NCBI GenBank assembly: GCA_976226885.1
Contig: OZ320315.1
Span: 84,196,001 to 84,260,000 of the forward strand
Reading direction: 5' to 3'
DNA: 64,000 nt
Source of the DNA: Iphione sp. A-MEVVRFRX5
Lineage: Eukaryota
In this document: positions 1 through 56,900 of the stretch, piece after piece
How the letters are laid out: each line of letters opens with the position of its first letter
Position numbering within the stretch: the first letter of the stretch is position 1
The notes under the pieces: generated by a model
What the model was told of the DNA's origin: nothing
The model's input: only the letters and a program-made list of their open reading frames with translations
Database searches by the model: none
Program-made: the position numbers and the translations under genes

Positions 1-2998
1 CCATAATAAAACAATATGTATATGTGTACAGATTGCTTTAGTTTAACACTGGGATATCTAATTTATCTCTGTGGCTCTGACTGAGTTCGAAACAAAATTA
101 CAAATGATGGGATGATATAACAATGCCCTGGTACGCCTCATGCCAGAAATTCCCATGAATATATATACCAGTAAATGAACAGCTCGGTGGTATTATTCAG
201 TTTCATTCAGTGTCTTTGTCTTGAATATCAACTTATACTGGGCTGAGGTTCAGTGACCTTAGAGGTCTGTGTTTTCATTGGATGACAAGAAACCATTGAT
301 TGCCCCGTTTTAGCCTATGTAACCTTGCCTCCGACCCCCTCCAGTACGCATTTAGCCTCTAGTCCACTAGGCACGCAATGTTGCGTGTTTCCTGTAATGT
401 CCTACAGAGGGCAGTAGCGACGCACTAGCCCCTAGTGGCAAGATTAGACACTGGCGGTAGGCGTCTTAGGGCTGGGCGACATTGGGGGGAGGGGGCTGGG
501 GATGGAGATGGGGATGTGGAGTTGTACACGCTGACATGGACGGCCTCGCTCGAGGTGTGGACACGCTAGTCACCGCCATGCCCTTCACAACGGCCGCTTA
601 CTGGACTCGCCAAGGTCATCATCTCCATTTGGCCAGTATTACTGGTTGATTTAGCGAACAAACAGACCAACGGGGTCTCTATGTGCTCACTGTTAGACTA
701 CACTGGCCATCGCGCCAATTGACCGCCGCTAACATCCGGCCCTCCAAAGCGATACATATTGACGTGAGCTGGCCCGACAGGTTTCTTATTGTTATGCAAG
801 GAAAATTAATGAATAATCAAACTGACGAGGTATACTTTCTTTCAGTGGCTGTCAAATTTATACATGTACCGGTACATATGAATGTACACGTATAACGTAA
901 ATTATTCCTCTGTTTATGTTGTTCACTCCACATAGATTGTGACCACAGCGTGAATTGATCTCGTGAGTCAATACCATTATGATGCTCCTTTCGCTCAATG
1001 CAATAAAATTTAAATTAGGCGGCAAATAAGCAGGTCTGATTGCCAAAAAGCTCACCGTCACGCTCTCAGGAGTAGGGCGGGAACAGCTAAATTCGATATG
1101 ATCAGTCATTCTAAAGCATGATCATAAAGTTGTTTCCAGTTAAATTACCCTTAAACAAACATTACATGTACATAACGCAGTTCTTGGAGATGGGCGATAC
1201 GTGACGGCGATCTTTCCAACTAGATTGGCTCCGAGTAGACAACATACCCTCTAGAACTCAAGTCATAGCCACGAAACAGAATTTCCAAATATTTTGGCCT
1301 TCTAATTCTATTCCAACTCCATCTGATACTTTCCTTCTAAACATCTGATATGTAAAGCCAAATACACATCTACAAATACATGGAGTTACCTTTACTGGTG
1401 TAATCAATTGAGAAAATGATACAGATCATGACAGAGAAGCGTGGTATCAACATTGTACGATGTCTTCCTACCTGTTCAGAGCTTTCGTCATTTCTTGTGC
1501 TCTCATCCGTTCGTCCTACACCGCTGTCTTTCTCTTGTTTATTAGATGAGTTCTCTGTCGTGGCCGTATCGGTTGTCCCTCCTTCTTCGTCGTTACCCTG
1601 AATGAATAAATCAGAAATTGAATATAGTGATGAGAAAAATAAGGATCATTTACATATTTCATCAGGTAGAGAAAAAAACTTATACATATTTCAGGGCTAA
1701 TTGGCAAAGTCGTTTGCAATTTTCGCTGGACAAATAGATCACACGTTGAACTTGAATCTCCATTTACCTGGACTGCCATGTATTTGAGGGTAAAATCTAG
1801 CCATGGTATAATCGGTTTAAAACTTTTGGATGTAGCAGTATAAATAACCTAAATACAGATATGGATATTCATCCAGAACCGTCTGGAGTTACTACAAAGA
1901 CTACGTAGAGTGTCGGACCTGGACGGCGAGTCTACAGGTTTGAATGGCCACGGTCGAGAGATCAAAGAGGCTCTCTCTACTTTTGGCTTGTAATGAACCA
2001 CGATGTGACGACAGCAAATTCAGTCATTCGTCTCTCTGCATAAAAGAGCCGCATTCTGTATCTGACACAGGGGAGGACAATCAATTTATCGTCACCTGTC
2101 ACCAATCAGCAGTAAAAATCTATGCATCCGTCGCCTATTGTACGATTTGTCAGTGGAGTTAATGTCTGAAGTGGTAGTCGCCCCATGTGAAGCAAAGCCG
2201 TTGGATGGCGTGAATTCTGTCATCCCTCAGGAGTTTTTAACCAGAAAACAAACAGTGAGTTCATAACATTTGAATGTATGGGTCTTCACGGCGAAAAGGA
2301 TGGAACCGCCTCTGCACACAGGGTTTGGAGAAGAAGAGAAAAAAAACTTTTCAATTTGGTAACTGAGCGATCCTTCGCGCGTATGCTAGATGTTAAACGA
2401 CATACCGAACCAGATCGGCAATTCGTGCCATTCGCAACGGGTTGATGAATGAAATAAATCGGAAATAGTGTAGTGCAGTTCATAATGGGGAATTTTGTGG
2501 AATACCTTAAAGATTCAAACTGCAATATACTATTACGTACCATGTAGTCAAAGACACATACACTACATCCCGGAGACATGGGAGATGCTTTCCATCTGAG
2601 GTGTATTTTGATTGGCAGCCGTTTGAATGCAGAATAGTAGATACCCCCTGGGGCCGTGATCCAGGATGTTACCTGGGCCGCAGGTAAAGATCAAAAGGAA
2701 CACTCATTTGCCGCCTACAGGGGTGTACCCCATGAGGGCTTCATTAGCAGTCGTGCCCTAGGTAACAATTTTTTAACTAGTTGGCCAGGACAACCTATAA
2801 GGTATGTTTACAAAACGTATAGGTCCTGTTTTCAATTCAGCCCGGTCGATTCAATTATCTAGCCAATATTTATTTGTCTGTTTACCCTCGCAGTCAATTA
2901 AAGAGGGGCTGCTTTTCAATGAAGACCACTAGAATACATGTATTTGTCCGTTTGGAACTATCATTAATTGTGCTGGAAATGTCATTTAAAAATTCCAC

Positions 2999-9503: not shown

Positions 9504-9611
9504 CTGTGTGAGTAGATTTTGTGAGAAAGTTGAGGTGCAAGCATGCTGCTCTAGCATCTCCATAGGCAGCTCGTCCAGTATGTTGTGTTCGTCCATGAAC
9601 CCATCGTCCAT
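9504..9611 (-). CDS. PDZRN3: PDZRN3/4-like exon, post-PDZ acidic segment (MDDGFMDEHNILDELPMEMLEQHACTSTFSQNLLTQ)
   Basis: Acceptor tttttttcttctag|ATG, donor CAG|gtatgt, 108 nt, phase 0-0. Resembles LDEGW.DD..N.FL..L.M.MLE.H of PDZRN3/4. Confidence 0.88.
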
Positions 9612-31100: not shown

Positions 31101-31202
31101 CTGGACGAGTTGGGGTCGGGACAGGAGCAGGGTAAGGTCGGTCCGGTTCTCGGCGAAGAGCCGGATGGCCTGCTCACGACTGTGTACATCCACGCCATTT
31201 AT
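31101..31202 (-). CDS. PDZRN3: PDZRN3/4-like exon, PDZ C-terminal part (INGVDVHSREQAIRLFAENRTDLTLLLSRPQLVQ)
   Basis: Acceptor gttgcctgcag|ATA, donor CAG|gtaagt, 102 nt, phase 0-0. Lies inside track ORF 31014..31544. ING-V pattern follows directly on GDQILQ. Confidence 0.93.
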
Positions 31203-31279
31203 CTGCAGGCAACAGATACAAGAAACATTAGAAAGGCATCCGAAGCGTCGGTTAGCAATGGTTGCTGCTTGTTTGGCAA

Positions 31280-31615
31280 CGTCGCGGGCGACGACGACGA
31301 GGAGGCGGCGAGTGCGTAGGTGCAGGGGAGGTGCTGTGAGAGCAACAACCTGTCCGTGCGCCACCGTGGAGACCGGAGTTGGATGATGATGATGACGGAA
31401 GCGGTGAGAGCTGCTGCCGCCGCTGCCACTGCCGCCGCTGCTGCGGCTGCTGCTGCTGCTGGCGGGCTGGCTGGGTGGTTGGTTGGTGGTGGTGTAGTGG
31501 TGGTGGTGCCACAGCGCGCGCGCTGGGCGCTTGCCCTCATGCAAAGCCCACCTACTGCTGCACTGCCTCCTGCTGCTCCTGTGGCTGCTGCTACTGCTGC
31601 AGCAGCGGCGGCCGC
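31280..31615. repeat. GC-rich mosaic of trinucleotide repeats (GAC, GAT, GCT/GCC, GGT) just upstream, on the gene strand, of the 31202 exon
   Basis: gacgacgacgagg, gatgatgatgatgac, gctgctgccgccgctgcc, ggtggtggtgtagtggtggtggtg, gctgctgctactgctgcagcagcggcggcc. Confidence 0.85.
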
Positions 31616-32337
31616 CTGGTCGGACAGGCGGGCATATACAGCTACTGCACCAATTGCTTCCGCTGGAATTTTGACGGCTACCCTTGAAAACGTGGCCTAC
31701 TTATTACCTACATTACTACATGCACCAGCCGTAAAGAAAACACTTCAAAGGTGAACACAAAAGGTATCAACAACGATGATTAAGCAAACGATACAAGCAA
31801 AAATTCTTCCCAGTATGTCTTTTAAAGAAAAGTGTCCGTGAAACCTTAGGACATGAACAGGTCGTTCCAATATCTGGTCCTTGTTTGTGAGCGATACTCG
31901 CGCTGGTTTATTACAAAGTCAGGGGAATTGCGCCGCTGTATCATCGATAATTTGTGCTTTCTGATGACCCATTTACCAGTTTTTCATCCATACGAGCCCC
32001 GATCAAAATTTAACACTAGCAACGATCGGTTGTCCTGTGTTGCGGACGTGGTTCGGTATTGTAGCAATCCTGATCGCAATGCTTGGACTATACAATGCAT
32101 TGGAAGCATGCTGGCCAGCAAGCTGCAATTCACCTTCTTGCTTAGTCTTGTTATCGATTCATTCGAGAAACAATAGGTTCGATGAAATGTCCTTCATCCA
32201 CCTAAGGCCTGCCAGGATTTGAATCAAGCGCCATTTGTAGGCTGACGAGGCATAGCCCTCCCCCCCCAACCTCCATGTCATCATAGTCCTGGTGCTTTCA
32301 CCCCCACACACATCACCTGCCAGAGGCGGCGGCTTAG

Positions 32338-40700: not shown

Positions 40701-41575
40701 TGATGTTTTGTTCATGAGGAGCGTGCAACCATAACACGGTTTATTTATGCTCGTATTAAGGTCCATGACAAATGCTGTGAAATATAAGCCCATCCGAAAA
40801 ATGCGTCCAGCCGAATCACGCTGTAATATCTTAATAACACGACGAGAGTGTGTATTCATGGAAATGCTCTTCTTACGCAGCAACTTTCTGCAACAGGCGT
40901 GGCGTTACGTGATGAAGGCAAGGCAAATCTGAACTTCAACTTAATTATAGAACTTGAGTCGTGAGCTAGTGCAATTATCACGTTTTCTTTCTGGAGTTAT
41001 GGAACATGCGGTCTCCACTGGGAAGACATGTCAGGTCAATTATGCCACGCCAGGCCGGCCAGACAAATATAAGTAGTCATCAGGTAGCAGGCACTTATGC
41101 ATATAAAATGCAATTTCTTCTGCGTCAGGTATCGTTTTAGGATGTACGCAGGAAACAAAAATCAGAAAGGCCTTAACCAGTCTACACAATAACACAATGC
41201 TGAAAATCACTACCGGTATAAGCACGTGTATACATGTACATGCATATATATATATATTATATACAAGTATGTTTGTGAAAGCGGAGTTGGAATAAAGATG
41301 AACATATGATAGTCTGGTGTTAGAAACACGGCCATAACGGCAGTTGGGGGAATTCAGTGAAACGCGTTAGACTTATAGAAACAACATGAGGAAAATCGTT
41401 GTTTGATAAACATCAAGTAAAAGTCTTAAAGATAGGTACTCATTTTTTTCTCATCTCCACTCACAGGAATAAAAATGCAGGTATTTGACATGTTTAGCTA
41501 GTTGCATGACACGAAATTGACAGAGGAGATAACACATTGGTTTCTTTTTAAAATATAAGTGTCGGCAGCACATAC

Positions 41576-41638
41576 CTGGAGTATCTGGTCTCCCTCGTGT
41601 ATACGTCCACTCCTGCCGGCCACACCATTTGGCTCGAT
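41576..41638 (-). CDS. PDZRN3: PDZRN3/4-like exon, PDZ middle part (IEPNGVAGRSGRIHEGDQILQ)
   Basis: Acceptor ttttgttctgcag|ATC, donor CAG|gtatgt, 63 nt, phase 0-0. Contains the PDZ signature A..GRI..GD.ILQ. Confidence 0.92.
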
Positions 41639-42304
41639 CTGCAGAACAAAATGGGAGAAAATATATCACTAGGCGTCGGGAGCAGCCGGTCAGAGATAGG
41701 CGATGTTTTCCTACACATGTGCATAACACTTGGCCGTATAGTTGGGTTAAAAAAAAAGAGAAGAAGTAGCTGACAGCCATAGGTCTCCCGCATGACCGGC
41801 TGTGTAGCCGCGGGCGCCACACCAGGACTGGTAGGGGCCGCGTGTTCTGGACTCTCTGTATGGGTGACTTTACAGGCTGTACGTCCGGGTCGGATTTCTG
41901 TTCTGCTTTTTGGCCAACCCATCGACAATGACATAAACCTGGTCACAGACAAGCTGAGTATAATCTAAAGAAGGTAAACTGTTTAAACAATACGGAAATA
42001 TCGGAAATAAAAACAACATGTGGATTCTGAAATATGATCTCAAGCGAAACGCACATAGAGTTACACACATCAACAAATTCTATTTCCACAAAGAACTATC
42101 TTTCATACATATGGAAGTATAGTCTGGTTTCAACCGCGCACTGTTAACTGACAATTCCAAACACGGTATGTTATGCAAAGCCCAGTCCAGTCCGGACAGC
42201 AGCGAACAATAGTAATGGATCGCGAGCAACTCCGCCAGCTGAATAGGTCGTATTATGTTTCACCTTCATATTTCTTCACAAAAGGATGACACGGCAGAAC
42301 TCAC

Positions 42305-42382
42305 CTTGGTTGCTGAACAGATACAGGTGTGCTGTGCCTCGACTGTGGTGGTGGCTGAGCCGCAGGACAGCACTGTGCCCAT
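42305..42382 (-). CDS. Candidate alternative first coding exon (MGTVLSCGSATTTVEAQHTCICSATK) joining the 41638 exon
   Basis: Strong Kozak cacgccATGG, consensus donor AAG|gtgagt, exactly 26 codons (phase 0), 667 bp upstream of a phase-0 acceptor, MGxxxS acylation motif. Confidence 0.6.
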
Positions 42383-45246
42383 GGCGTGCTCCGGCCAACC
42401 ACCCCGCCGCCCCACTTGCCGGGGCTGGCTGCAGGAAGGCGGCCAAATACCAACTCCTGCTCGCACCCCCCGGCTTGGACGTGGAGGAGGCGGTCAGTCG
42501 GTGGTGGCATGCATCGCCCTCCTCTGCCACCTCCCAGGCAGCAGCCACAAACTGACCGGAGGCCGTTATGGCCGCCGTCGGAGGCAGGCGATTCGGCGGG
42601 CTGGGCCGATGACCGGTCGGAGAATTCTCTCCAGGAAAGTCCCTGCCCAGAGCCCTATGAATATTTCAACCCCTCCATGGCCACAACAGGCACTGTTCCT
42701 CTGTTTGACTGCCGCGGCCGGCACATTCCACGGCGAACTATATCCATCTGCAGCAGCAGCGGACACTTATGACCAGCGTAAAGCCCAGCAATGAGTTATT
42801 GGCCGGAGAGCGGCGAGTCGCTCTCGTAATGGGACGGTGGCTGTGCAGTGTTGAAGCAGCACACTCACCAGCGCCTCTAGTCACGGTCTGACCCGTTGTT
42901 GCGTTGTATACGTATCCGTCCTGTGTGAGTAGTAGTGGCAGCGGTGCAAGTAAGACCAGAGGATTAAACGTGTGGGCCTACCACTCCTCCTCTTGTTCCT
43001 CCTACCACTCCTCCACCCACAAGACGCCGCCGCCGTGTGCTTCTCTACCGCCTACATCCCTTCCTGACATTCAACAGCTTGAGGCTCTGGGGCACTCTCC
43101 TCCTAAGGTACTTTCCCTCGCTACGGCTTCTCCAGCTTCTTCCTCCAGCTCCCCACAGGCCACTGGCTGGTCTTCACACTGAGTAACCCAGTGGCCCTTC
43201 AGGATGTGTTCTGATCGTCTTGATTCAGGAGCTCTTCCTACCTCATGGTTGCCAGGAGCATCGCGCTCCATTTACCTCCCACCTCTACCCACACCCCATT
43301 CCGTTTCTCACCCCCCCCCCCGTAGGCCGTAGCTTCGTATTGGCGGGGGGAGTGTTAGGGGCTGCCAGTGCTAGACAACAGCGCTTTCCGGAATCACTCC
43401 TTCCAACCGAAAGAGACCTTGTAAATACACTTCACCTGGCTTTCCCACAAACTAGTGAAGCGGAGCTGGGGCTTGGAATGGGTAACATGCAGGTGCACCG
43501 ATAGGAACCTGGCACTCAGGCCCATCGTTTCATCATATCCAGTTGTAGCAGCAGCTAGTTGGAGAGAAGTCCCCAATTGTTCCTCCTTTACCTCACACTG
43601 TTAACGTATATATTGTCAACTTGAAATTGAGGGATGACAGAGCCCAACGACTTCTCTCAAAGGACCCAGGCTCTTCTTTGTTGTCATTCCTAACATGCGC
43701 GTACCTGTCTCAGGGAGGAGAATGAAACGTTTGGGTTGGATTGCCATCAATCTTCACTAATACCCGAATCAGCTTGGAAGGGACCTTCCGTCGATCTCAG
43801 CCACGTAGTGAATACCGGTATATCTTAGTCGCCCATTGGTTTGAGCCCTTCTATCCCACTCCCAAACCTCTACCGCCCTTGCTCTTTATCCTCTTTTCCT
43901 GTCTACCTTTTCTCACTGCCTTCCAAGCCGCGGTACTCCGCGCAAACGGCGGCAATGAAGGATCGCTGCTAGAACTAAAAGCCCAGGTCCGCGTCGTCGA
44001 CCTGGCTCAAACGGCCATCTAGCAAATTGTTACAATCCTCCTCGCAAAGTAGCTGTGTGATACATAATTCAGCCTTCAAAAACAGCACTCTGTTAAATGG
44101 GAAGGCCAAGGCGTTAGTTTAGTGATAACTATTTATGCAGGTTTCCCTCATTTGATGAGCTTTGTCCCGCATTAAGAATATAGGAAAGACCCGACCGTTG
44201 GTGAGGGAACAAGGCTATCACGTAGCACCCTGCTTAAGTAGAGGGTTAGAAGGAGATGCCATGTAGAAAAAAAGAGTAATTAATGGATAAATTGCAAAAT
44301 TAAGAGAAAGAGAGATAAGAAGAGAATGGGTCAGAAACAAAGACAGGAAGATAGACTCTGACGGATAGAGAAGATGAGAGAGAAAGTAGAAATCATTATA
44401 GGTAACAAAAAATACTTTTAAGTTGTAACTGACTTGCTAGATAAAAGCAATATAAAATTGATTGGCCTTGTCCATCGTTTTATGAGCCTTATCTAGATGC
44501 AGACGAAAATGATGTATTGATGCAAGCTTTCACAATATTATGGGACTCATGGCTGCAAAGTACTTTAGCTTTCAACTCATTGCAGAAAAAGTGCTTGCAA
44601 TGCCACGCTAAAGGGTTTTGTTATGGAAAGGTAGAAACATACAGGCGCTCTAAATCGATTTATCCTCTCCATATGTGGCGATAAAACATTTCTTGCGATT
44701 TACATCTTTTATTTATGACCAGTCTGGCGCAGTAAAATGAAAGTTAGATCATTATTAATATAGAAAAAAAAAACATTCAAGCCACAATTGTTAATTTGAA
44801 CTGAAGTGAATCTCCTTACTTTCCATTTTCTCTGCAAAGCAAGTCTCAATGAAATGTGGTTTGCTCTCCTACTACGTAATTCTGTCTGATTGCAAGAGAC
44901 AGTGTGCATGCTCTGATAAACACGTAAACCTAGCCTTGAAGTTCAGCCCTGGATTCCTTTAACACTCCAGAGGACATAGAAAGCCTCACCATCTCTCTTA
45001 CAATAAACAGATGTATCGACGATGGACAATACCGTCTTTCCCTAATGCATGTTTAAAATTTACCCGGTCAACATGAAAGGCGACCTTTTCTTGTTCTGGA
45101 CGGAAGACAAAACCTGTGGTTTCTCCGCCAAGTCCGTGGAAGCACTTGGACTTGTCTGGAGGCCATCTTCGCCACAGCCCCTCACCTCCCAATGGCCCCT
45201 CTTTGGCCTGTATCTTTGACCCGGATATCATGTGAAACATCAGCGA

Positions 45247-49176: not shown

Positions 49177-49275
49177 CTCTGATACGAAGACGTCGGTAAT
49201 GTCGGCGACTGCTGAGCCGTAACACAGAGTGAGACCTATCTTATCGGACGGACATTTTCTGGTTAAGGTCACCTC
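49177..49275 (-). CDS. PDZRN3: PDZRN3/4-like exon, PDZ N-terminal part with carboxylate-binding loop (EVTLTRKCPSDKIGLTLCYGSAVADITDVFVSE)
   Basis: Acceptor tatcttgcag|GAG, donor GAG|gtaagg, 99 nt, phase 0-0. Not in the ORF track. Matches the DKLGLTVCY...IYISE motif. Confidence 0.92.
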
Positions 49276-52229
49276 CTGCAAGATACACATAAAAATACAT
49301 TATGTAACACCGGGCAAAATCAAACCGTGTGAACATACACTTGAATATAGTGAACAAAAATCCCACACACCTACACAACATATTTCGTGTAAGAACCAGT
49401 CGAGGAAAATTTATCATATTTTCGACTTGAGTATGAAATAACACTCTGTGAACCTTATGCAAGTGTGTTTGCTAAATATTACCATGATTATTTGACTCAA
49501 CGACAGTGGTGTTACATGTCCCTGAAGAGAAACGATATTAACACGGCTCATATTGATGTAATTGAGACTCCATTGAAAATCAAAACATAATAATATGGGC
49601 AAAATATTTGCCTTCAACGCAGGTATCAACATATCAGTCATCTCATTTCTTCTAAAGGTGTCTCGAAGTTTGGAATGGGGTGCAGCAATTCGGGCAACGG
49701 GCGTGGAATTTTATTACTCTTCAGATAAGGCACATAACGTTACTCCATTCATAAAATCTGTAATACACCGTTTGCATTTACTTTCGAATCATTCTCGCAA
49801 GAAAATGTGAACAATCCTGCTCGCAGGGGTCAGAACATCCACCGCTTTGGTATCGATCTATGTTCATGTATATTTGTTGAGTTAAGGGATCGCTACATCC
49901 CAGTTCGACCGAACAGTAACTCTCCTCAGTGTTCGCTATGCACGAGTCCTTTCATCCTACGAATCTATTAATATATCAAACCGAGTACCCTGCGGCACGT
50001 TCTCGACGTTTATGAATCGTTGCGAGGTAAGCTACGGTGACTGTCGCCATTACTCTCTCTCTCTCTCCTCCCCCCTCGTCTCCAAATGATCACCGGCTAC
50101 CACATGATGACATCACAGGTTTGAGGGGACCCCTGGTAGTGAGAGTTGAATGGGTTCTGGGTCAGGAGGTCGGACGACTGGTGGCCGGGTGGAGACGACG
50201 ATGACAAGCAGGACCATGGTGGGTACGGTGTTACCAAGAAGAGATATTTCCAGCTAGATTCGCATAGTTTGCCTACGGATTTCATCACACAGTAAAATGA
50301 TCGTGGTTGAATCTAGTTCTGGGAGAGCCTCTGCGATCTTTAAAAAAATATTACTAAATGTATGGTGCAAGAGGTGATATTATAAATCCAAGGTACCAAT
50401 TTATCGCCTGGAGTTGTCATTAACTCTGTGAGGTAAACGTAACTGCCTGCCAGTCTACACTGGAAAAGATCCAACTGTTCGAAGGAAATCGAATTTCCAT
50501 TCAAACTCAATGCACCGAACGGTAATCGAAGCGTTATAATTTCACCACAAAAAGACCACTCTAGCTTGGCCGGGGCTTGATTTAGTAGGAAGTACACTGT
50601 CGACAGTTCATAATAAATCCTGCCCCATCAACAGTGGGGGAATTTTGCTGGCAACATTTCAATTTAGTTAGAAATATATACATGTACAAATACTTTCACT
50701 GTCACTGCCTTCGGTGAATGGGATGCGCATGTGCCAGTGGTTACATGACTTCGCATTGTAGCAGATGCTTTACACAAGGGATATCTAGGAGAAATATGTT
50801 TTAATGGAAGTGAAAATTGGGAAATTTTATCGTGGCATAGCATATAAAATATTCATGAGCTTTTTATAAGACAATTCCTCTGGGTGTCATTTGGGTCTCC
50901 GCTTAGGGCCATGCGATGTACAAACGTTTCGTTCCCATGAAAGTCATCTCCTATTTAATCAATATAATTCCTTGGGTAAATCATAGAAGGAAAAATTTAG
51001 TCCAAAACTGTATGGGTATCGTTGGACCCGTTTCGTACGCACATCTTTAACCTATTTTCTCGAGTGACCTTAAGCAAATGAAGACTGTGTGTACACTAAC
51101 CTCAGGAGGGGATTATCGTTTTAGAACTGCACGAAGGTCTGCACAGACCTAACTCAGGTAATGCACGTATCGTAACGGCCCCTTTCGACTTCATGCTTTC
51201 CTCATACGCACCTTCTAATTTACGACCCCGTTTCTAATCACCAGCCGGGCCGAGGTCTTTGTCTCATGTAGTATGCACTCTCGCCCCCCCCCCCGGTTAC
51301 TGGTGTCAAGAAAAATGGCTGTTCGGCGCTGCCGTTCAACAGCGTACTCTTGGTCGTAATACATGCACTTCCAAATAACGCACGGTTGTGAAGGTGACCT
51401 CGGCGCATACGGCAATAAGCATTCATCACCGCCGCTGATATTAATCAGTGGAACTCAATATTGAATCGACTGGGAACACCCTTTCGTAGCGCTGCTGCAA
51501 AATGCTTAAGTGAGCAAGCTAACTGCAAGAGGGAACCTCTAAGCCCTGCTCATTAGCATATGACTATGTACAGCACCCAGTCACCTGCAATAAAACCGGA
51601 CTCAAAGGGAGAAAATAGCAACATCATTATCTCTGATGAAACAGACCTTTAAACACCGGCAGCGTGTTTGAAGTGCAAAACGCCTGTTAAAAGTGCTAAT
51701 CGCCTGTACTTGTTGATTCGTTCAGTCGGATAATAACAAGCAAAAAGTTTACCATTTGCAAGCATGTATGTTTGCATAGAGAATAATAAACATAGACAAC
51801 ATATGTGTACATGGTCTACTACTTATATATCTTCTGACATATTCAAGCTATTTCATCCGTGCTGGCAAAGCCTGTAGTGACCACTTGTTTCCAAAAGTTA
51901 AGGTCCGACCTTCCGTGTTTAGGACCCACGCCACTCCCCATTAAAGTATCTCTCACTGTGAGCCTAGTCAGTCTTCCTATGGCTGCTCTAATATCGAACG
52001 GCTGTGGTGGGTGATCGTCAGCAGGAGAGGGACAGATCAAAGCCGAGGCCTCTCCCGCCGGTCACCATATCATATCCCGAAGGAGAGCAAGCGGCTCATG
52101 CCAGCGAATAGCACCGTGCCCTCCCTGCGCAGTATATCCGAGCAGACACAGGCGGCATGTTTGCCCCCGCCAGGAGGCGCACCGCGGGGACCACTAATAC
52201 CCGTGTCAGACGCCGGCCGGGACACGGCC

Positions 52230-53906
52230 TATAGAAGAGCGCGGAGCTACGTCACAACTCGGGGCAGTCAAGCGGAACCACTGAAAACCCTCACAGTGAT
52301 ACCCACATGTACACATACATATGGTGCTTTAACTACAGATATGTGTATAGTTGTGTGTATAGATGTGTGGTTGTATGTGTGCATGGATGTGTGTAGGTAT
52401 ATGTGTCTATAAATATGCATGTAGTTGTGTGTATAGATGTGTGTATTTGTGTGTAGGTACATGTGTCTATAGAAATATGTGTGTATAGATGTGTGTATGG
52501 ATGTGTAGGTGTCTATAGATATGTGCAGTTGTGTGTATAGATGTATGTATGGATGTGTCTAGGTGTGTGTGTCTATAGACATATATGTAGTTGTGTGTAT
52601 AGATGTGTTTATGGATGTGTGTAGGTGTATGTGTACATAGGGATGTATGTAGTTGTGTGTATAGAAGTGTGTATGGATGTGTCTATGTGTCTAAGGACAT
52701 GTATGTAGTTGTGTGTATGGATGTGTGTAGGTGTATGTCTGTGCTGCCTGCAGATATGTGTGTAGCTCTGTTTATGGATGTGTGTATGTGTATGTGTATA
52801 CAGGCATGTATGTAGTTGTGTGTATAGAAGTGTGTATGGATGTGTCTATGTGTATGTGTCTAAGGACATGTATGTAGTTGTGTGTATGGATGTGTCTATA
52901 AATGTGTGTAGCTGTGTGTACAGATGTGTGTAGGTGTATGTGTCTGTATACATGTATGTAGTTATATGTTTAGATGTGCATATGGATGTGTGTAGGTGTA
53001 GGTGTCTATAGAAATATGTGTGCAGTTGGGTGTATAGATGTGTGTATGGATGTGTAGGTGTAGGTGTCTATACATATGTACAGTTGGGTGTATAGATGTG
53101 TGTATGGATGTGTAGGTGTAGGTGTCTATACATATGTACAGTAGTGTGTATAGATGTGTGTATAGATGTGTGTATGGATGTGTAGGTATAGGTGTCTATA
53201 CATATGTACAGTTGTGTGTATAGATGTGTGTATGGATGTGTAAGTGTATGTGTCTATAGATACGTGCAGTTCTGTGTACAGATGTGTGTATGGATGTGTG
53301 TAGGTGTATGTGTCTATAGATATGTGCATTTGTGTGTATAGATGTGTGTATGGATGTGTAGGTGTATGTGTCCATAGATATGTGTAGTTCTGTGTATAGA
53401 TGTGTGCAGGTGTATGTGTGTCTGTAGACATGTCTGATAGATGTGTACAGAGATGTGTGTATGAATGTGTGTAGGTATCTCTTGGTGTTTGTGTGAATTT
53501 ATATATGTATCTATATGTGAATGTGTAATGGCATGTATGTGCATGCTAATATGAGCATGTAGAGATGTCAATATGTTTTTTATAGGGAGTGTGTGGACTT
53601 CTGTTTATATAAATGTGAGTGTATGTGTGTATCAGCATATACATGTATTTTCTATATGAAGATCTGTGAATATGTACAAAGGTGTAGATATGTGTGTATG
53701 CATTAGTAGATATGTGTATGGATGTGTAAAGGTGTATGTGCTTTGATGTATGTATACATATGTATAGGTGAGTGTGTGTGTGTGTGTCTTTCTTTCTCTC
53801 CTCTCTCTCTCCCCTCCCTCTATGTGTTAGCACTACTTCACACCTTTGTTTTCAGTGGTTACGCCTGAGTGCCCCCGAAGTCCCCGGCTGTCCGCGCTCT
53901 TCTATA
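52230..53906. mobile_element. Putative non-autonomous DNA element (MITE/foldback-like) with 58-bp imperfect terminal inverted repeats and an internal minisatellite; possible TA target duplication
   Basis: Left arm 52230-52287 TATAGAAGAGCGCGGA-N15-GGGGCAGTCAAGCGGAACCACTGAAAA. Reverse complement of right arm 53849-53906 is TATAGAAGAGCGCGGA-N15-GGGGCACTCAGGCGTAACCACTGAAAA. Identity is 16/16 and 24/27 in the two blocks. No transposase inside. Confidence 0.55.
52320..53790. repeat. Degenerate TG-rich minisatellite, unit about 52-60 bp
   Basis: Repeated unit such as TATAGATGTGTGTATGGATGTGTAGGTGTAGGTGTCTATACATATGTACAGTTGGGTG (58 bp, near-exact adjacent copies around 53030-53150). Ends in (TG)n followed by a TC-rich tract. 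Confidence 0.9.
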
Positions 53907-56900
53907 CGCAGCCTGGCCCCCGGGATGATGGGGGGGGGGTCCTCCCGAGTCAGCGATAGCAAGTGGCTGGTGGTGGGGCAGAGTCGCCACGGAACCCATA
54001 CAAAAACAGCACAAAAAGGGACTACGTTGGCCCGACTGAGCGCAAAGGGACAGCGCGAGTACATTTCGGAAAAGAAAAAAGAGACAATCTCATTTTGCAG
54101 CATGTCCCTTTCTCGGAAGCCACTTTTGATATACTACTTGGTCCACAGTATGCCACGTGACGCTTGTATGGTAATTGGGATAAGTGGCCAAAAAAGAGCA
54201 GCCTCATACAAAACATTTTCTGTATATACATGTATTCGGACAAAACTTCACGTCAGCGACAATGTCTGTTCATTTAAACCTCCATAACCACATATTAGGT
54301 GTGGCATTGAAAATGCTGAAATTACCCAATACTCAAAGAATACTTGAGTACATATGTACTGAATCTGGATGTTGCTAAAAGAAACCTTATATACATACAC
54401 ACACATATATATATATATGGACTGACAATATGAGCAATATTCAAGCTAAGGATATTGGTAAATAGCTCAGACCGGTAAATACCAGTTGTTTTGTGCAATA
54501 TTGAACGGTTAAGCCCATAACCATATTAGGAAGACTAATTGACTGCCCTATTTGATGGTACTTTTCATTCGCTCTACCTCCTCAGCGTCTTCCTTCCTTA
54601 GTCTTCTCCGCACGTTAGGCAGGCCATTTGGGGCCGCGTGGAGTTGTTTATACCGGTGAAGGGCCCCTTTCCTAGTTGCCCCCAACAAGCTTGCCCGCTA
54701 CTGGGCTTGAGGCAAGGCCCACTCTCAGGCATATTGTTATTCTCTCCACGCGTCCTCCCACGGAAGGCCACCGGAGGCCATGTAGAGGCGAATCCCCCTA
54801 TTGTCTGCTGATAAGATTCCACTGACAGCAATGATAAGCGACTAGCACATGACAACACCCTGCTCGCCGGAGGTAGAAAGGAAGAGGGCAGGGTTAGGGC
54901 GGGCGGAGGGGCGCTGATGAACCCACAGGGAGGCAGGGCAGCTCGGGCCACGCTGAAAGAGTCGGCCAGCAAAGCAGCTTAGAACCAACCAGCAGTACAC
55001 TAGGCAGCCACGGGTTGGGGGGGGGGGGTGACTGCCATGTCATTGACAGTAACACACCCAAGACAGACCAGCTCGTGAGAGACACTATGCTGGAGATCTG
55101 TCGAGCAGAGACACGAAAGGGTCTCCTTAAAAAGGCTCCGCGGCCAGGATTGAGGCAGAGGAGTGAGGGTGATGGATGAAGAGTCTTGTCATCAGAAATT
55201 CCCCAGAAGCAAGGGCTGGACCTGCGACCAGCAGATTGGGTTTGCACTTCTCGTAGGTAGATGGAACCGGCATCTTGATGAAGACATGAAGAATCTATTA
55301 TATTTGCCTATCAAATTATGCCAGTCCTCGGAGTGTTGTCATTTAGATATGCAAACACCGTAAAATACGATCAGCAGACGGATATTCATTTCTAATCCAC
55401 GATAGTACTTTTTTAGGACATACTAAAACCTAAAAATGTCTCCAACTGTTTAAATCCATATGTGAGTAATTTTGTCTGCACTGCCATAACCTTACATGTA
55501 TGTTCCATTGAGCCTCAGAAGGAAACAGTGCAGCATGATTCAGTATTCATCGCAATGGCAAAGCAATTATGCAACGAGGGGAAAGCTATTGTTTGAGCTA
55601 GAGGGGCTTTTTTCGAAGTGCCCCTTGCCAGCCCTTTACGATACTTTGTGTCCTGTAAATATGGCCTCGTAAAGCCAGAGGTAATTCCTTCTACAAGCTA
55701 TTCCTTCCTCTCGTTGTTCAATTGCTTAGCGTAGAATACATACATTTTTTAACTAAGAACCATTGTCAACAGCTGTATTTCAAATGCCTTACCCTGTTGA
55801 ATACCTCTTAATCAGTGGGCCAATGCCTTAGCCTTAATTTGTACGATAAACGATGCTGTCACTTCGAGGCATGCTCTAGAAACATCTTCCCCAAATCCAC
55901 CGCTTCCGGTTCCGCCAAATGCTCCCCATGTCGGTATGTTTTGAAATGATGGGCAAGCCATTGTTCTTTCGGACGGTTGTCATCCGTGAATTTTTTTTAA
56001 AAATTCATTGCCATGCTGGGTGATCCTATTGTCAGCTTAGTCAAGCATCTAATCAGCATCGATTTTTAGATTGTCGCATATTTCAGATTTAATGTGGCGT
56101 GCCGACGTCGACGCTCATCGCCATGATATATGGGGGAGCAATGGAAACGAGAAAACGCCTCGGACCACCACCCAGCTGCACGCCATGCATCCTCTGGCCC
56201 TAATAGTGACCAAAACTAAACAAGGGGGAACCAATAACGGGATGAAGACTTACCAAACGTCACCATCGGAGAGCGTCGTCACAAAGGACGCTCCGGAGGA
56301 GGTACTCCAGTCTAGGAAGCATTCTATTCTGGTCGGTAGTCAGGCAGGCGTACAAATAGGGTAAGAAATATTCCACTGGTGTTTTTTTGTTTTGCCCCGG
56401 TGCACAATATGCGTATTCATGGGCAATACGAGACAAAGAGTTAATATTTCTTCTGTACACGCCAGTTGGTTTGGTCAGGCCGAGAAAGACGAGACATTTA
56501 ATGAGCAGGCACCAGAGCCTGGCCACAGAAGCAGACGATATTGAGTTGCTTTGTTTGTTCTGGACATAATATCACCCAGGCTACTCTCCTTCACGTCTGC
56601 CAAGTCTGCAGGAAATTTAGGCAATTTTAACGTTCGTCCATCTCCGTGCATTTCATGAGATTTCAATATTCTATGCGTGGCGCCTGCCAGGGAATGAAGT
56701 TGACAATAAATGAAAACGTCAGATACCAAATCGAAAGAAATCTGAAAGATGAAGTGTACTACACGGTTGTTGAGTCAAGTCGTATCCACGACTTCTACTT
56801 CTTGATTTTTGAGCAGAAACTTTCCTGACAAATTGACAGCTGCTCAGTCACTGGCTCGCTACACAGGCAGTGATCTTTAATAACTAACGTATTAATGCAA

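What the first reader, a model, noticed from the sequence alone, without database searches (positions are those of the whole stretch)
42305..42382. Internal first exon that gives a PDZ-broken PDZRN isoform a myristoyl/palmitoyl-type anchor (MGTVLSC)
Seen: ideal Kozak, ATG GGC, 26 codons, consensus phase-0 donor, and the next acceptor (IEPNGV) is phase 0. Established: MGxxxS is the N-myristoyltransferase consensus, and MGTVLS matches the first six residues of myristoylated CDK5R1/p35 as I recall it. Vertebrate PDZD4 and short PDZRN isoforms begin with an acylation-type MGC N-terminus spliced into the first PDZ region. Inference: an apparently independent acylated start is plugged into the second PDZ after the KIGLTL ligand-binding loop. 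This would give a membrane-anchored, RING-less, PDZ-dead isoform, with Cys7/20/22 as possible palmitoylation sites, that could act as a dominant negative or scaffold.
Basis: partly seen in the sequence, partly recalled or inferred. Interest (0 to 1): 0.7.

Follow-up and report, generated by a model that had tools for sequence, protein, structure and literature searches.

The report
Unproven lipid-anchor start exon in PDZRN3
Inside an intron of a worm's PDZRN3-like gene lies a well-formed possible alternative start exon whose first residues match a known lipid-attachment signal, but no RNA data or related species could show that it is used.

Summary
On the minus strand, ATG 42382 to AAG 42305 encodes 26 codons (MGTVLSCGSATTTVEAQHTCICSATK). 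It has a purine at -3 and G at +4, and ends at a near-perfect phase-0 donor (AAG|gtgagt, 12.45 of 12.74 bits). It lies in the 7.5-kb phase-0 intron that splits PDZ2 of a spiralian, annelid-like PDZRN3/LNX3-type gene, 666 nt upstream of the IEPNGV exon.

The side claims hold. GTVLSC fits the N-myristoylation rule and equals residues 2-6 of myristoylated p35. Vertebrate short PDZRN3/4 isoforms do start MGC(S/N)LC spliced into PDZ1. Removing exon E1 takes away about 40% of PDZ2, including the binding loop.

Use of the exon is unproven. No sequencing run was listed, and an ORF search found no relative. About 70 spiralian PDZRN3 isoforms have many alternative first exons, but none at this junction except one unrelated Nucella model. 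The orthologous introns of Lottia, Pomacea and Lingula hold nothing similar. Chance expectation is 0.003 to 0.06 per 64-kb strand, so the signals alone do not decide.

My estimate is about 0.4 that it is a real start exon and about 0.4 that it is chance. If real, it would be a new variant of a known kind.

The parts
42305..42382 (-). Candidate alternative first coding exon: 26 codons, MGTVLSCGSATTTVEAQHTCICSATK
   Evidence: Read directly and translated. It is the only Kozak-type ATG with an open frame and a strong phase-0 donor on this strand.
42299..42304 (-). 5' splice donor gtgagt following AAG, phase 0
   Evidence: 12.45 bits of a maximum 12.74. The gene's confirmed donors score 8.4 to 12.7.
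42383..42428 (-). 46-nt ATG-free leader between an acceptor-like site (ttcctgcag|CC, first base 42428) and the ATG
   Evidence: If 42428 were used as an acceptor in transcripts from upstream promoters, the 124-nt cassette would shift the frame.
42494..42514 (-). Six-codon upstream mini-ORF (ATG 42514, in-frame TGA 42496-42494), plus an out-of-frame ATG at 42510
   Evidence: These would hinder translation of the main ATG if transcription starts upstream of 42514 and the leader is not spliced.
42864..42872 (-). Second strong donor (CTG|gtgagt, last exon base 42869), a possible end of a non-coding leader exon
   Evidence: 10.6 bits. It is one of only three donors of at least 8 bits in 44600-41500. 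All five upstream ATGs between 43000 and 42383 lie between this donor and the 42428 acceptor. That this is a leader exon is inference only.
42100..43500 (.). GC-rich patch (0.56-0.62 GC against 0.46 for the window) around and upstream of the candidate exon
   Evidence: CpG observed/expected is not raised (0.5-0.8 against 0.78 for the window). The patch is not repeated in the window. It has no Pfam hit in its ORFs and no Rfam hit.
49177..49275 (-). PDZ2 exon E1 (EVTLTRKCPSDKIGLTLCYGSAVADITDVFVSE), which the proposed isoform skips
   Evidence: Homology to spiralian PDZRN3.
41576..41638 (-). PDZ2 exon E2 (IEPNGVAGRSGRIHEGDQILQ), the proposed splice partner
31101..31202 (-). PDZ2 exon E3 (INGVDVHSREQAIRLFAENRTDLTLLLSRPQLVQ)
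9504..9611 (-). Exon E4 (MDDGFMDEHNILDELPMEMLEQH...), which starts with an in-frame ATG
1472..1597 (-). Exon E5 ([42 protein letters not shown]), a family-specific conserved motif

Best explanation
The most likely single reading, by a small margin, is a lineage-specific alternative first coding exon of a spiralian PDZRN3/LNX3-type gene. Transcription would start in the GC-rich patch inside the PDZ2 intron. The start could lie just upstream of the ATG, or in a short non-coding leader exon that ends at 42869 and is spliced to 42428. The 26-codon exon would then be spliced from 42305 to the phase-0 acceptor at 41638. The product would lack the RING, PDZ1 and the first ~40% of PDZ2 (beta1, the KIGLTL binding loop, beta2-3). 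It would keep the C-terminal PDZRN-specific regions. Its N-terminus, Met-Gly-Thr-Val-Leu-Ser-Cys, would lose Met1 and receive myristate on Gly2, possibly with palmitate on Cys7, tethering the protein to membranes. What is shown: the sequence signals, the reading-frame compatibility, the loss of the PDZ fold and the match to a proven myristoylation signal. What is inferred: transcription, splicing, translation, acylation and any function.
For: Start context, open frame and a near-maximal phase-0 donor are all present, and the combination is unique on the strand. Chance expectation is 0.0033 per 64-kb strand at this donor strength, or about 0.0004 for this 7.5-kb intron. All five flanking coding exons are phase 0, so the junction is in frame. 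The exon lies in the second most GC-rich patch of the window. This gene family uses many internal promoters: spiralian species show 4-8 alternative N-termini each, entering at several different exons. Lingula starts an isoform just before E1. One Nucella model (KAL8593720.1) starts exactly at the E2 acceptor. Vertebrate short isoforms begin with the acylation-type MGC. A RING-less mouse PDZRN4 isoform with a truncated N-terminal PDZ is Golgi-bound (PMC11882927). GTVLSC fits the N-myristoylation rule, and its residues 2-6 equal those of myristoylated p35.
Against: No transcript evidence could be obtained, because no run was listed. No ORF-level homologue exists in 5.8 billion clustered proteins, although a related worm's DNA contig is in that collection. 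None of about 70 annotated isoforms from Lineus, Mytilus, Octopus, Mercenaria, Ruditapes, Pomacea, Patella, Liolophura, Lingula and Biomphalaria starts at this junction. The Nucella first exon is unrelated (MDIITGVFQ, no Gly2). The orthologous introns of Lottia and Pomacea have no comparable exon, and Lingula's intron is only about 150 bp. The GC-rich patch has no raised CpG content. Upstream ATGs at 42514 and 42510 would interfere unless the start site or splicing avoids them. A pattern this rare per window still occurs by chance roughly a hundred times in a gigabase genome, and the plus-strand control has one at the >=8-bit threshold.
Confidence: 0.4

Rival explanations
1. Chance arrangement. 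An intronic GC-rich stretch happens to contain an ATG in good context, a short open frame and a consensus GT donor. It is never used as an exon and has no function.
For: There is no conservation signal of any kind and no expression data. GC-rich sequence lengthens open frames and makes ATGG/GGC common. The plus-strand control shows one Kozak+MG+small-residue-6+donor pattern at >=8 bits. Expectation is 0.003-0.06 per 64-kb strand, which means tens to hundreds genome-wide. Another GC-rich patch next to E3 (31.0-31.7 kb) needs no promoter to explain it.
Against: At the observed donor strength the expectation for this one intron is about 0.0004. The site lies 666 nt upstream of a phase-matched acceptor, in a gene family that uses many internal first exons.
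Confidence: 0.4
2. The segment is a real exon but not a coding first exon of a stable isoform. It could be a 124-nt cassette (42428-42305) included in transcripts from upstream promoters. That would shift the frame and give a stop in E3, so it would act as a poison exon for nonsense-mediated decay. It could also be part of an untranslated or regulatory transcript.
For: An acceptor-like site, ttcctgcag|CC, lies 124 nt upstream of the very strong donor. 124 is not a multiple of 3, and read from E1 the frame stays open through the cassette and then hits TGA in E3 (my own reading).
Against: The polypyrimidine tract is mediocre (71% pyrimidine, against 82% at E2). No transcript data exist. The well-placed ATG, and the fact that it is the first ATG after that acceptor, fit a coding start better.
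Confidence: 0.1
3. The exon belongs to an independent nested transcript, or to an exonised or mobile-element-derived promoter unrelated to PDZRN3.
For: The GC-rich patch differs in composition from the rest of the intron.
Against: The patch has no repeat copies in the window and no terminal repeats. ORFs on either strand have no Pfam domain, and there is no Rfam family. No other coding exon was found nearby.
Confidence: 0.05

Closest known systems
Vertebrate short PDZRN3 / PDZRN4 isoforms beginning MGCSLC.../MGCNLC...
   Same: Both involve an alternative promoter and first exon that supplies a Met-Gly start of acylation type. Both remove the RING and cut a PDZ domain in the middle, leaving the C-terminal PDZRN-specific regions.
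   Different: The vertebrate exon is joined before VNGKDLS, the second half of PDZ1, and leaves PDZ2 intact. It is conserved from sharks to mammals. Here the junction is inside PDZ2, so no PDZ survives. The peptide is unrelated (MGT, not MGC) and no conservation is seen.
Mouse muscle PDZRN4 isoform with a truncated N-terminal PDZ (tPDZ), Golgi-localised (PMC11882927)
   Same: It is a RING-less isoform carrying a broken PDZ at its N-terminus, and it sits on a membrane organelle. It is the closest experimentally studied analogue of what is proposed here.
   Different: It retains a complete second PDZ. The paper does not test or discuss acylation, so a link between the MGC start and Golgi binding is my inference.
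CDK5R1 / p35 N-terminus (MGTVLSLSPSYR)
   Same: The first six residues, MGTVLS, are identical. p35 binds membranes through N-terminal myristoylation.
   Different: There is no homology beyond six residues, and residues 7-9 differ. The resemblance bears only on likely recognition by N-myristoyltransferase, not on ancestry.
C. elegans PZLS-1 and Drosophila Slip1 (RING-less proteins of the LNX3H branch)
   Same: They show that the C-terminal LNX3H core works without a RING. PZLS-1 acts in Wnt-Ror-Dishevelled polarity (bioRxiv 10.64898/2026.10.09.757662). That makes a RING-less, PDZ-dead isoform functionally plausible.
   Different: They are separate genes, not isoforms, and no lipid anchor is described. 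The LNX3H region of the present gene lies outside the window and was not examined.
Nucella lapillus model KAL8593720.1 (P0071)
   Same: Its first exon is joined at exactly the same junction (MDIITGVFQ|IDPYSLAG...). Pfam no longer detects a PDZ above threshold (PDZ_6 scores 25.2 against a cut-off of 27).
   Different: The first-exon peptide is unrelated, with no Gly2. It is a genome-project 'hypothetical protein' model of unknown RNA support. Its locus could not be fetched.

Membership tests
N-myristoyltransferase substrates (PROSITE PS00008-type rule: G-{EDRKHPFYW}-x(2)-[STAGCN]-{P} after Met1) | Gly at position 2, a permitted residue at 3, a small residue at 6, and no Pro at 7 | tested here: met
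   The residues are G2, T3, S6 and C7. The rule is quoted from my own knowledge. Residues 1-6 are identical to p35, which is myristoylated.
N-myristoyltransferase substrates (PROSITE PS00008-type rule: G-{EDRKHPFYW}-x(2)-[STAGCN]-{P} after Met1) | The Met-Gly is a real translation start of an expressed mRNA | not testable with these tools
   No sequencing run was listed for the exon or its surroundings, so read laying could not be used.
N-myristoyltransferase substrates (PROSITE PS00008-type rule: G-{EDRKHPFYW}-x(2)-[STAGCN]-{P} after Met1) | Myristate is covalently attached to Gly2 | not testable with these tools
   This needs metabolic labelling or mass spectrometry.
PDZRN / LNX3-LNX4-LNX5 branch of the LNX family | A second PDZ domain and the conserved [19 protein letters not shown] region, in the family's order | tested here: met
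   Exons E1-E5 align at 60-70% identity to spiralian PDZRN3-like proteins and at 50-54% to vertebrate PDZRN3. The orthologous Lingula PDZ2 matches PF00595 at 1.8e-11.
PDZRN / LNX3-LNX4-LNX5 branch of the LNX family | N-terminal RING, PDZ1, C-terminal LNX3H domain and TTV end | not tested
   These parts lie outside the 64-kb window. No such exons occur at 49.3-64 kb or below 1.4 kb.
Alternative-first-exon short isoforms of PDZRN genes | Own ATG, an open frame, and a donor in phase with a downstream constitutive acceptor | tested here: met
Alternative-first-exon short isoforms of PDZRN genes | Transcript support (junction reads, capped 5' ends) | not testable with these tools
   Searches listed no runs. 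Exact-match scans of metagenome contigs for E2 and for the candidate exon found nothing.
Alternative-first-exon short isoforms of PDZRN genes | The exon is conserved in related species | tested here: not met
   No protein shares three 5-residue words with the 66-aa ORF. None of about 70 spiralian isoforms has it. It is absent from the orthologous introns of Lottia, Pomacea and Lingula. Caveat: no close relative's genome could be examined, since the nearest homologue is only about 70% identical in PDZ2.
Alternative-first-exon short isoforms of PDZRN genes | Entry point in the middle of PDZ1, before VNG(K/Q)DLS | tested here: not met
   Here the entry point is the E1|E2 junction inside PDZ2. If real, it is a variant and not a member of the conserved MGC type.

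The most novel reading that the evidence does not exclude
An annelid-like worm has independently evolved what vertebrates achieved with their MGC exon. An internal promoter would give the PDZRN C-terminal (LNX3H) core a dual-acylation membrane anchor, here by cutting PDZ2 so that the product has no RING and no working PDZ at all. It would be a lipid-tethered, PZLS-1-like polarity or scaffold protein made from the same gene as the E3 ligase. That would be convergent evolution of membrane-anchored RING-less PDZRN isoforms.
Probability: 0.3. Interest if true: 0.45.

Novelty: new variant of a known kind. Interest (0 to 1): 0.3.

Why it matters
RING-less PDZRN/LNX3H proteins are now being linked to Wnt-Ror-Dishevelled polarity (C. 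elegans PZLS-1) and to neuromuscular-junction maintenance (the Golgi-bound short PDZRN4). What places them on membranes is not known. A second, independently evolved isoform with a textbook myristoylation start would support the idea that membrane tethering of the C-terminal core is a recurring, selected feature of this family. It would also draw attention to the untested MGC starts of the vertebrate isoforms. In its present state the finding is an annotation hypothesis for one unannotated invertebrate genome, and it may be a chance pattern.

Tried and rejected
1. RNA evidence. The look-up of sequencing runs on 41300-42900 (rna) and on 42230-42560 (any) listed no runs, so read laying could not be used.

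2. ORF-level conservation. The 66-aa ORF around the exon found no candidate. This is a weak negative, because the length filter (36-115 aa) and the patchy sampling of relatives limit it.

3. Same-species proteins. Searches with Lottia and Lineus homologues returned nothing closer than about 70% identity. The species itself is therefore not annotated in the collection.

4. Orthologous loci. The Lineus and Owenia genes are too long to fetch (279 kb and 192 kb), and the Lineus X3 isoform and Nucella are not on record. Lingula, Lottia and Pomacea were fetched and hold no equivalent exon.

5. Exact-match scans of metagenome contigs for E2 and for the exon found nothing, as expected.

6. Apparent duplicate exons in the Lingula locus proved to be the real E3 and E4 exons with over-extended alignments. 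I rejected this lead.

7. A CpG-island promoter is not supported. CpG observed/expected in the patch is 0.5-0.8 against 0.78 for the window.

8. Transposon or non-coding RNA origin of the patch is not supported. There are no repeats, Pfam hits or Rfam hits.

9. A literature search for acylation of PDZRN3, PDZRN4 or PDZD4 found no paper that addresses it.

Full report
**What is there.** On the minus strand the window reads cacgccATGG at 42389-42379. From ATG 42382 there are 26 open codons, MGTVLSCGSATTTVEAQHTCICSATK, ending at 42305 and followed by gtgagt. The next acceptor downstream, ttgttctgcag|ATCGAG at 41638, is phase 0. It opens the exon IEPNGVAGRSGRIHEGDQILQ, which ends CAG|gtatgt at 41576.

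**The host gene.** Motif and homology searches place five coding exons of one gene on the minus strand:
- E1, 49275-49177: EVTLTRKCPSDKIGLTLCYGSAVADITDVFVSE
- E2, 41638-41576
- E3, 31202-31101: INGVDVHSREQAIRLFAENRTDLTLLLSRPQLVQ
- E4, 9611-9504: MDDGFMDEHNILDELPMEMLEQH...
- E5, 1597-1472: [42 protein letters not shown]

All junctions are phase 0. A search of 1.84 billion representative proteins with E5 recovered PDZRN3/4-type proteins only. Over E1-E5 the best matches are PDZRN3-like proteins of Lineus longissimus (69.6%), an unnamed transcript-derived protein (67.7%), Lingula (66.7%), a chiton and Owenia. Vertebrate PDZRN3 reaches 50-54%. Window-wide CpG observed/expected is 0.78. The gene is therefore a spiralian PDZRN3/LNX3-type gene. 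Earlier notes on this genome call the animal annelid-like; my data fit that but do not prove it. The RING, PDZ1 and LNX3H parts lie outside the window.

E1, E2 and E3 together encode PDZ2. In the Lingula orthologue, Pfam PDZ covers residues 15-93 and E1 corresponds to residues 14-46. E1 therefore carries about 40% of the domain, including beta1, the binding loop and beta2-3. The candidate exon lies in the 7.5-kb E1-E2 intron, 666 nt upstream of E2.

**Is it more than chance?** I scored donors with a simple position matrix. The candidate donor AAG|GTGAGT scores 12.45 of a possible 12.74 bits. The five homology-confirmed donors score 8.4 to 12.7. On the whole minus strand, 19 ATG-initiated open frames reach a phase-0 donor of at least 8 bits. 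Only this one also has a purine at -3 and G at +4.

Order-3 Markov simulations (1,500 strands) give expectations for the full pattern: Kozak context, Gly2, a permitted residue 3, a small residue 6 and a phase-0 donor. Per 64-kb strand these are 0.058 at >=8 bits, 0.013 at >=10 and 0.0033 at >=12. The plus strand, used as a control, has one pattern at >=8 bits and none at >=10.

For this single intron the chance is about 0.0004. The exon lies in a GC-rich patch (0.56-0.62 GC, the second richest in the window). CpG content there is not raised. The patch has no repeat, Pfam or Rfam signal.

Both hold.
- The first 12 residues of p35 are MGTVLSLSPSYR (PMC5897396), and p35 binds membranes by N-terminal myristoylation (PMC4607440). 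GTVLSC also fits the PROSITE-type rule, which I quote from my own knowledge.
- Among the proteins retrieved, dozens of vertebrate PDZRN3/4 short isoforms begin MGCSLCSLQK...EVCQ or MGCNLC..., joined to VNGKDLS in the second half of PDZ1.
- The literature adds that a RING-less mouse PDZRN4 isoform with a truncated N-terminal PDZ is Golgi-bound and needed at the neuromuscular junction (PMC11882927).
- RING-less LNX3H proteins such as C. elegans PZLS-1 function in Wnt-Ror-Dishevelled polarity.
- None of the papers searched discusses acylation of these proteins.

**Tests of use and conservation.** None of these gave support.
- No sequencing run was listed for the region, for either RNA or DNA, so no reads could be laid.
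- The 66-aa ORF containing the exon shares no three 5-residue words with any protein of 36-115 aa in the 5.8-billion-cluster collection. That collection does hold a genomic contig of a related worm, whose E5 is 100% identical in protein and 82% in DNA, with no alignable intron.
- About 70 isoforms of spiralian PDZRN3 were listed, from Lineus, four Mytilus species, three Octopus species, Argonauta, Mercenaria, Ruditapes, Pomacea, Patella, Liolophura, Lingula and Biomphalaria. They show many alternative first exons. Most are joined to VNG(Q/R)DLS and some enter further downstream, but none enters at the E2 acceptor.
- The only model that enters there is a Nucella lapillus 'hypothetical protein', with an unrelated first exon (MDIITGVFQ|IDPYSLAG). 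In that model Pfam no longer finds a PDZ above threshold.
- In Lingula the E1-E2 intron is only about 150 bp.
- In Lottia (6.5 kb) and Pomacea (2.6 kb) the orthologous intron holds no Met-Gly start with a usable donor.
- The Lineus and Owenia genes were too long to fetch.

The exon is therefore not an old, shared feature. Whether it is conserved among close relatives could not be tested.

**Further anatomy.**
- Upstream of the ATG the frame is closed by TGA at 42496-42494.
- An in-frame ATG at 42514 opens a six-codon mini-ORF, and an out-of-frame ATG lies at 42510. Both would hamper the main start if they are in the mRNA.
- An acceptor-like site, ttcctgcag|CC, has its first exon base at 42428. 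It leaves a 46-nt ATG-free leader.
- A second strong donor (CTG|gtgagt, 10.6 bits) ends at 42869.
- All five ATGs between 43000 and 42383 lie between that donor and that acceptor.

A spliced non-coding leader is thus possible, but it is inference only. The same acceptor allows a rival reading. Included as a 124-nt cassette after E1, the segment would shift the frame and lead to a stop in E3.

**Verdict.** The anatomical and biochemical parts of the interpretation are sound. If the mRNA exists, the product would lack the RING, PDZ1 and a foldable PDZ2, and would very probably be myristoylated. Its existence is not shown.

I weighed three things: the strength and uniqueness of the signals, the family's habit of using internal promoters, and the complete lack of conservation or expression evidence. 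This gives about 0.4 for a real alternative first coding exon, about 0.4 for a chance pattern, about 0.1 for a non-coding or poison exon, and about 0.05 for an unrelated nested element. If real, it would be a new variant of a known kind: alternative-promoter, RING-less, PDZ-truncated PDZRN isoforms with an acylation-type start. It would be interesting mainly as a possible case of convergence with the vertebrate MGC isoforms.

Noticed in passing
Proteins P0284/P0290/P0293 (Octopus), P0063 (Lineus), P0053 (Pinctada); Several spiralian alternative first exons joined to the VNG exon are cysteine-rich and hydrophobic: MLSDQNLLSCCWCLGNFGTKL, MDWLGIFTYCFCRRPRSWQ and MKDLTGLLCCLGLGEKH. They look like palmitoylation-type membrane anchors. 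A short MDF(I/V/M)ILK first exon recurs across molluscs, in a Lineus (nemertean) isoform and in unnamed transcript-derived proteins.
   Followed up: partly
window 42864-42872 and 42428 (minus strand): A second strong donor (CTG|gtgagt, 10.6 bits) lies 560 nt upstream of the candidate exon, and an acceptor-like site lies 46 nt before the ATG. Every upstream ATG between 43000 and 42383 falls between them, as expected if a spliced non-coding leader exists.
   Followed up: partly
window 9609-9611 (minus strand, start of exon E4): Exon E4 begins with an in-frame ATG (MDDGFMDE...). Any transcript that starts in the upstream introns without a coding first exon could initiate there. Annotated spiralian isoforms starting MKSR... 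or MGLTDIEM... do the equivalent at other exons.
   Followed up: no
window 31203-31700: The most GC-rich 500 bp of the window (0.63) lies in the intron directly upstream of exon E3. It is open in several frames and encodes Ala-, His- and Ser-rich low-complexity strings. Its meaning is unknown.
   Followed up: no
window 52000-54000: A minisatellite-like block rich in TG/CA has extreme GC skew (+0.41) and long artefactual His/Thr/Tyr-rich ORFs on the minus strand.
   Followed up: no
L003 19721-19894 (Lottia gigantea) compared with window E2/E3 and L002/L004: The E1|E2, E2|E3, E3|E4 and E4|E5 junctions are at the same positions in this worm and in Lingula. E1|E2 and E2|E3 are also at the same positions in Pomacea. 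Lottia encodes E2 and E3 as one 58-aa exon, which indicates loss of that intron.
   Followed up: partly
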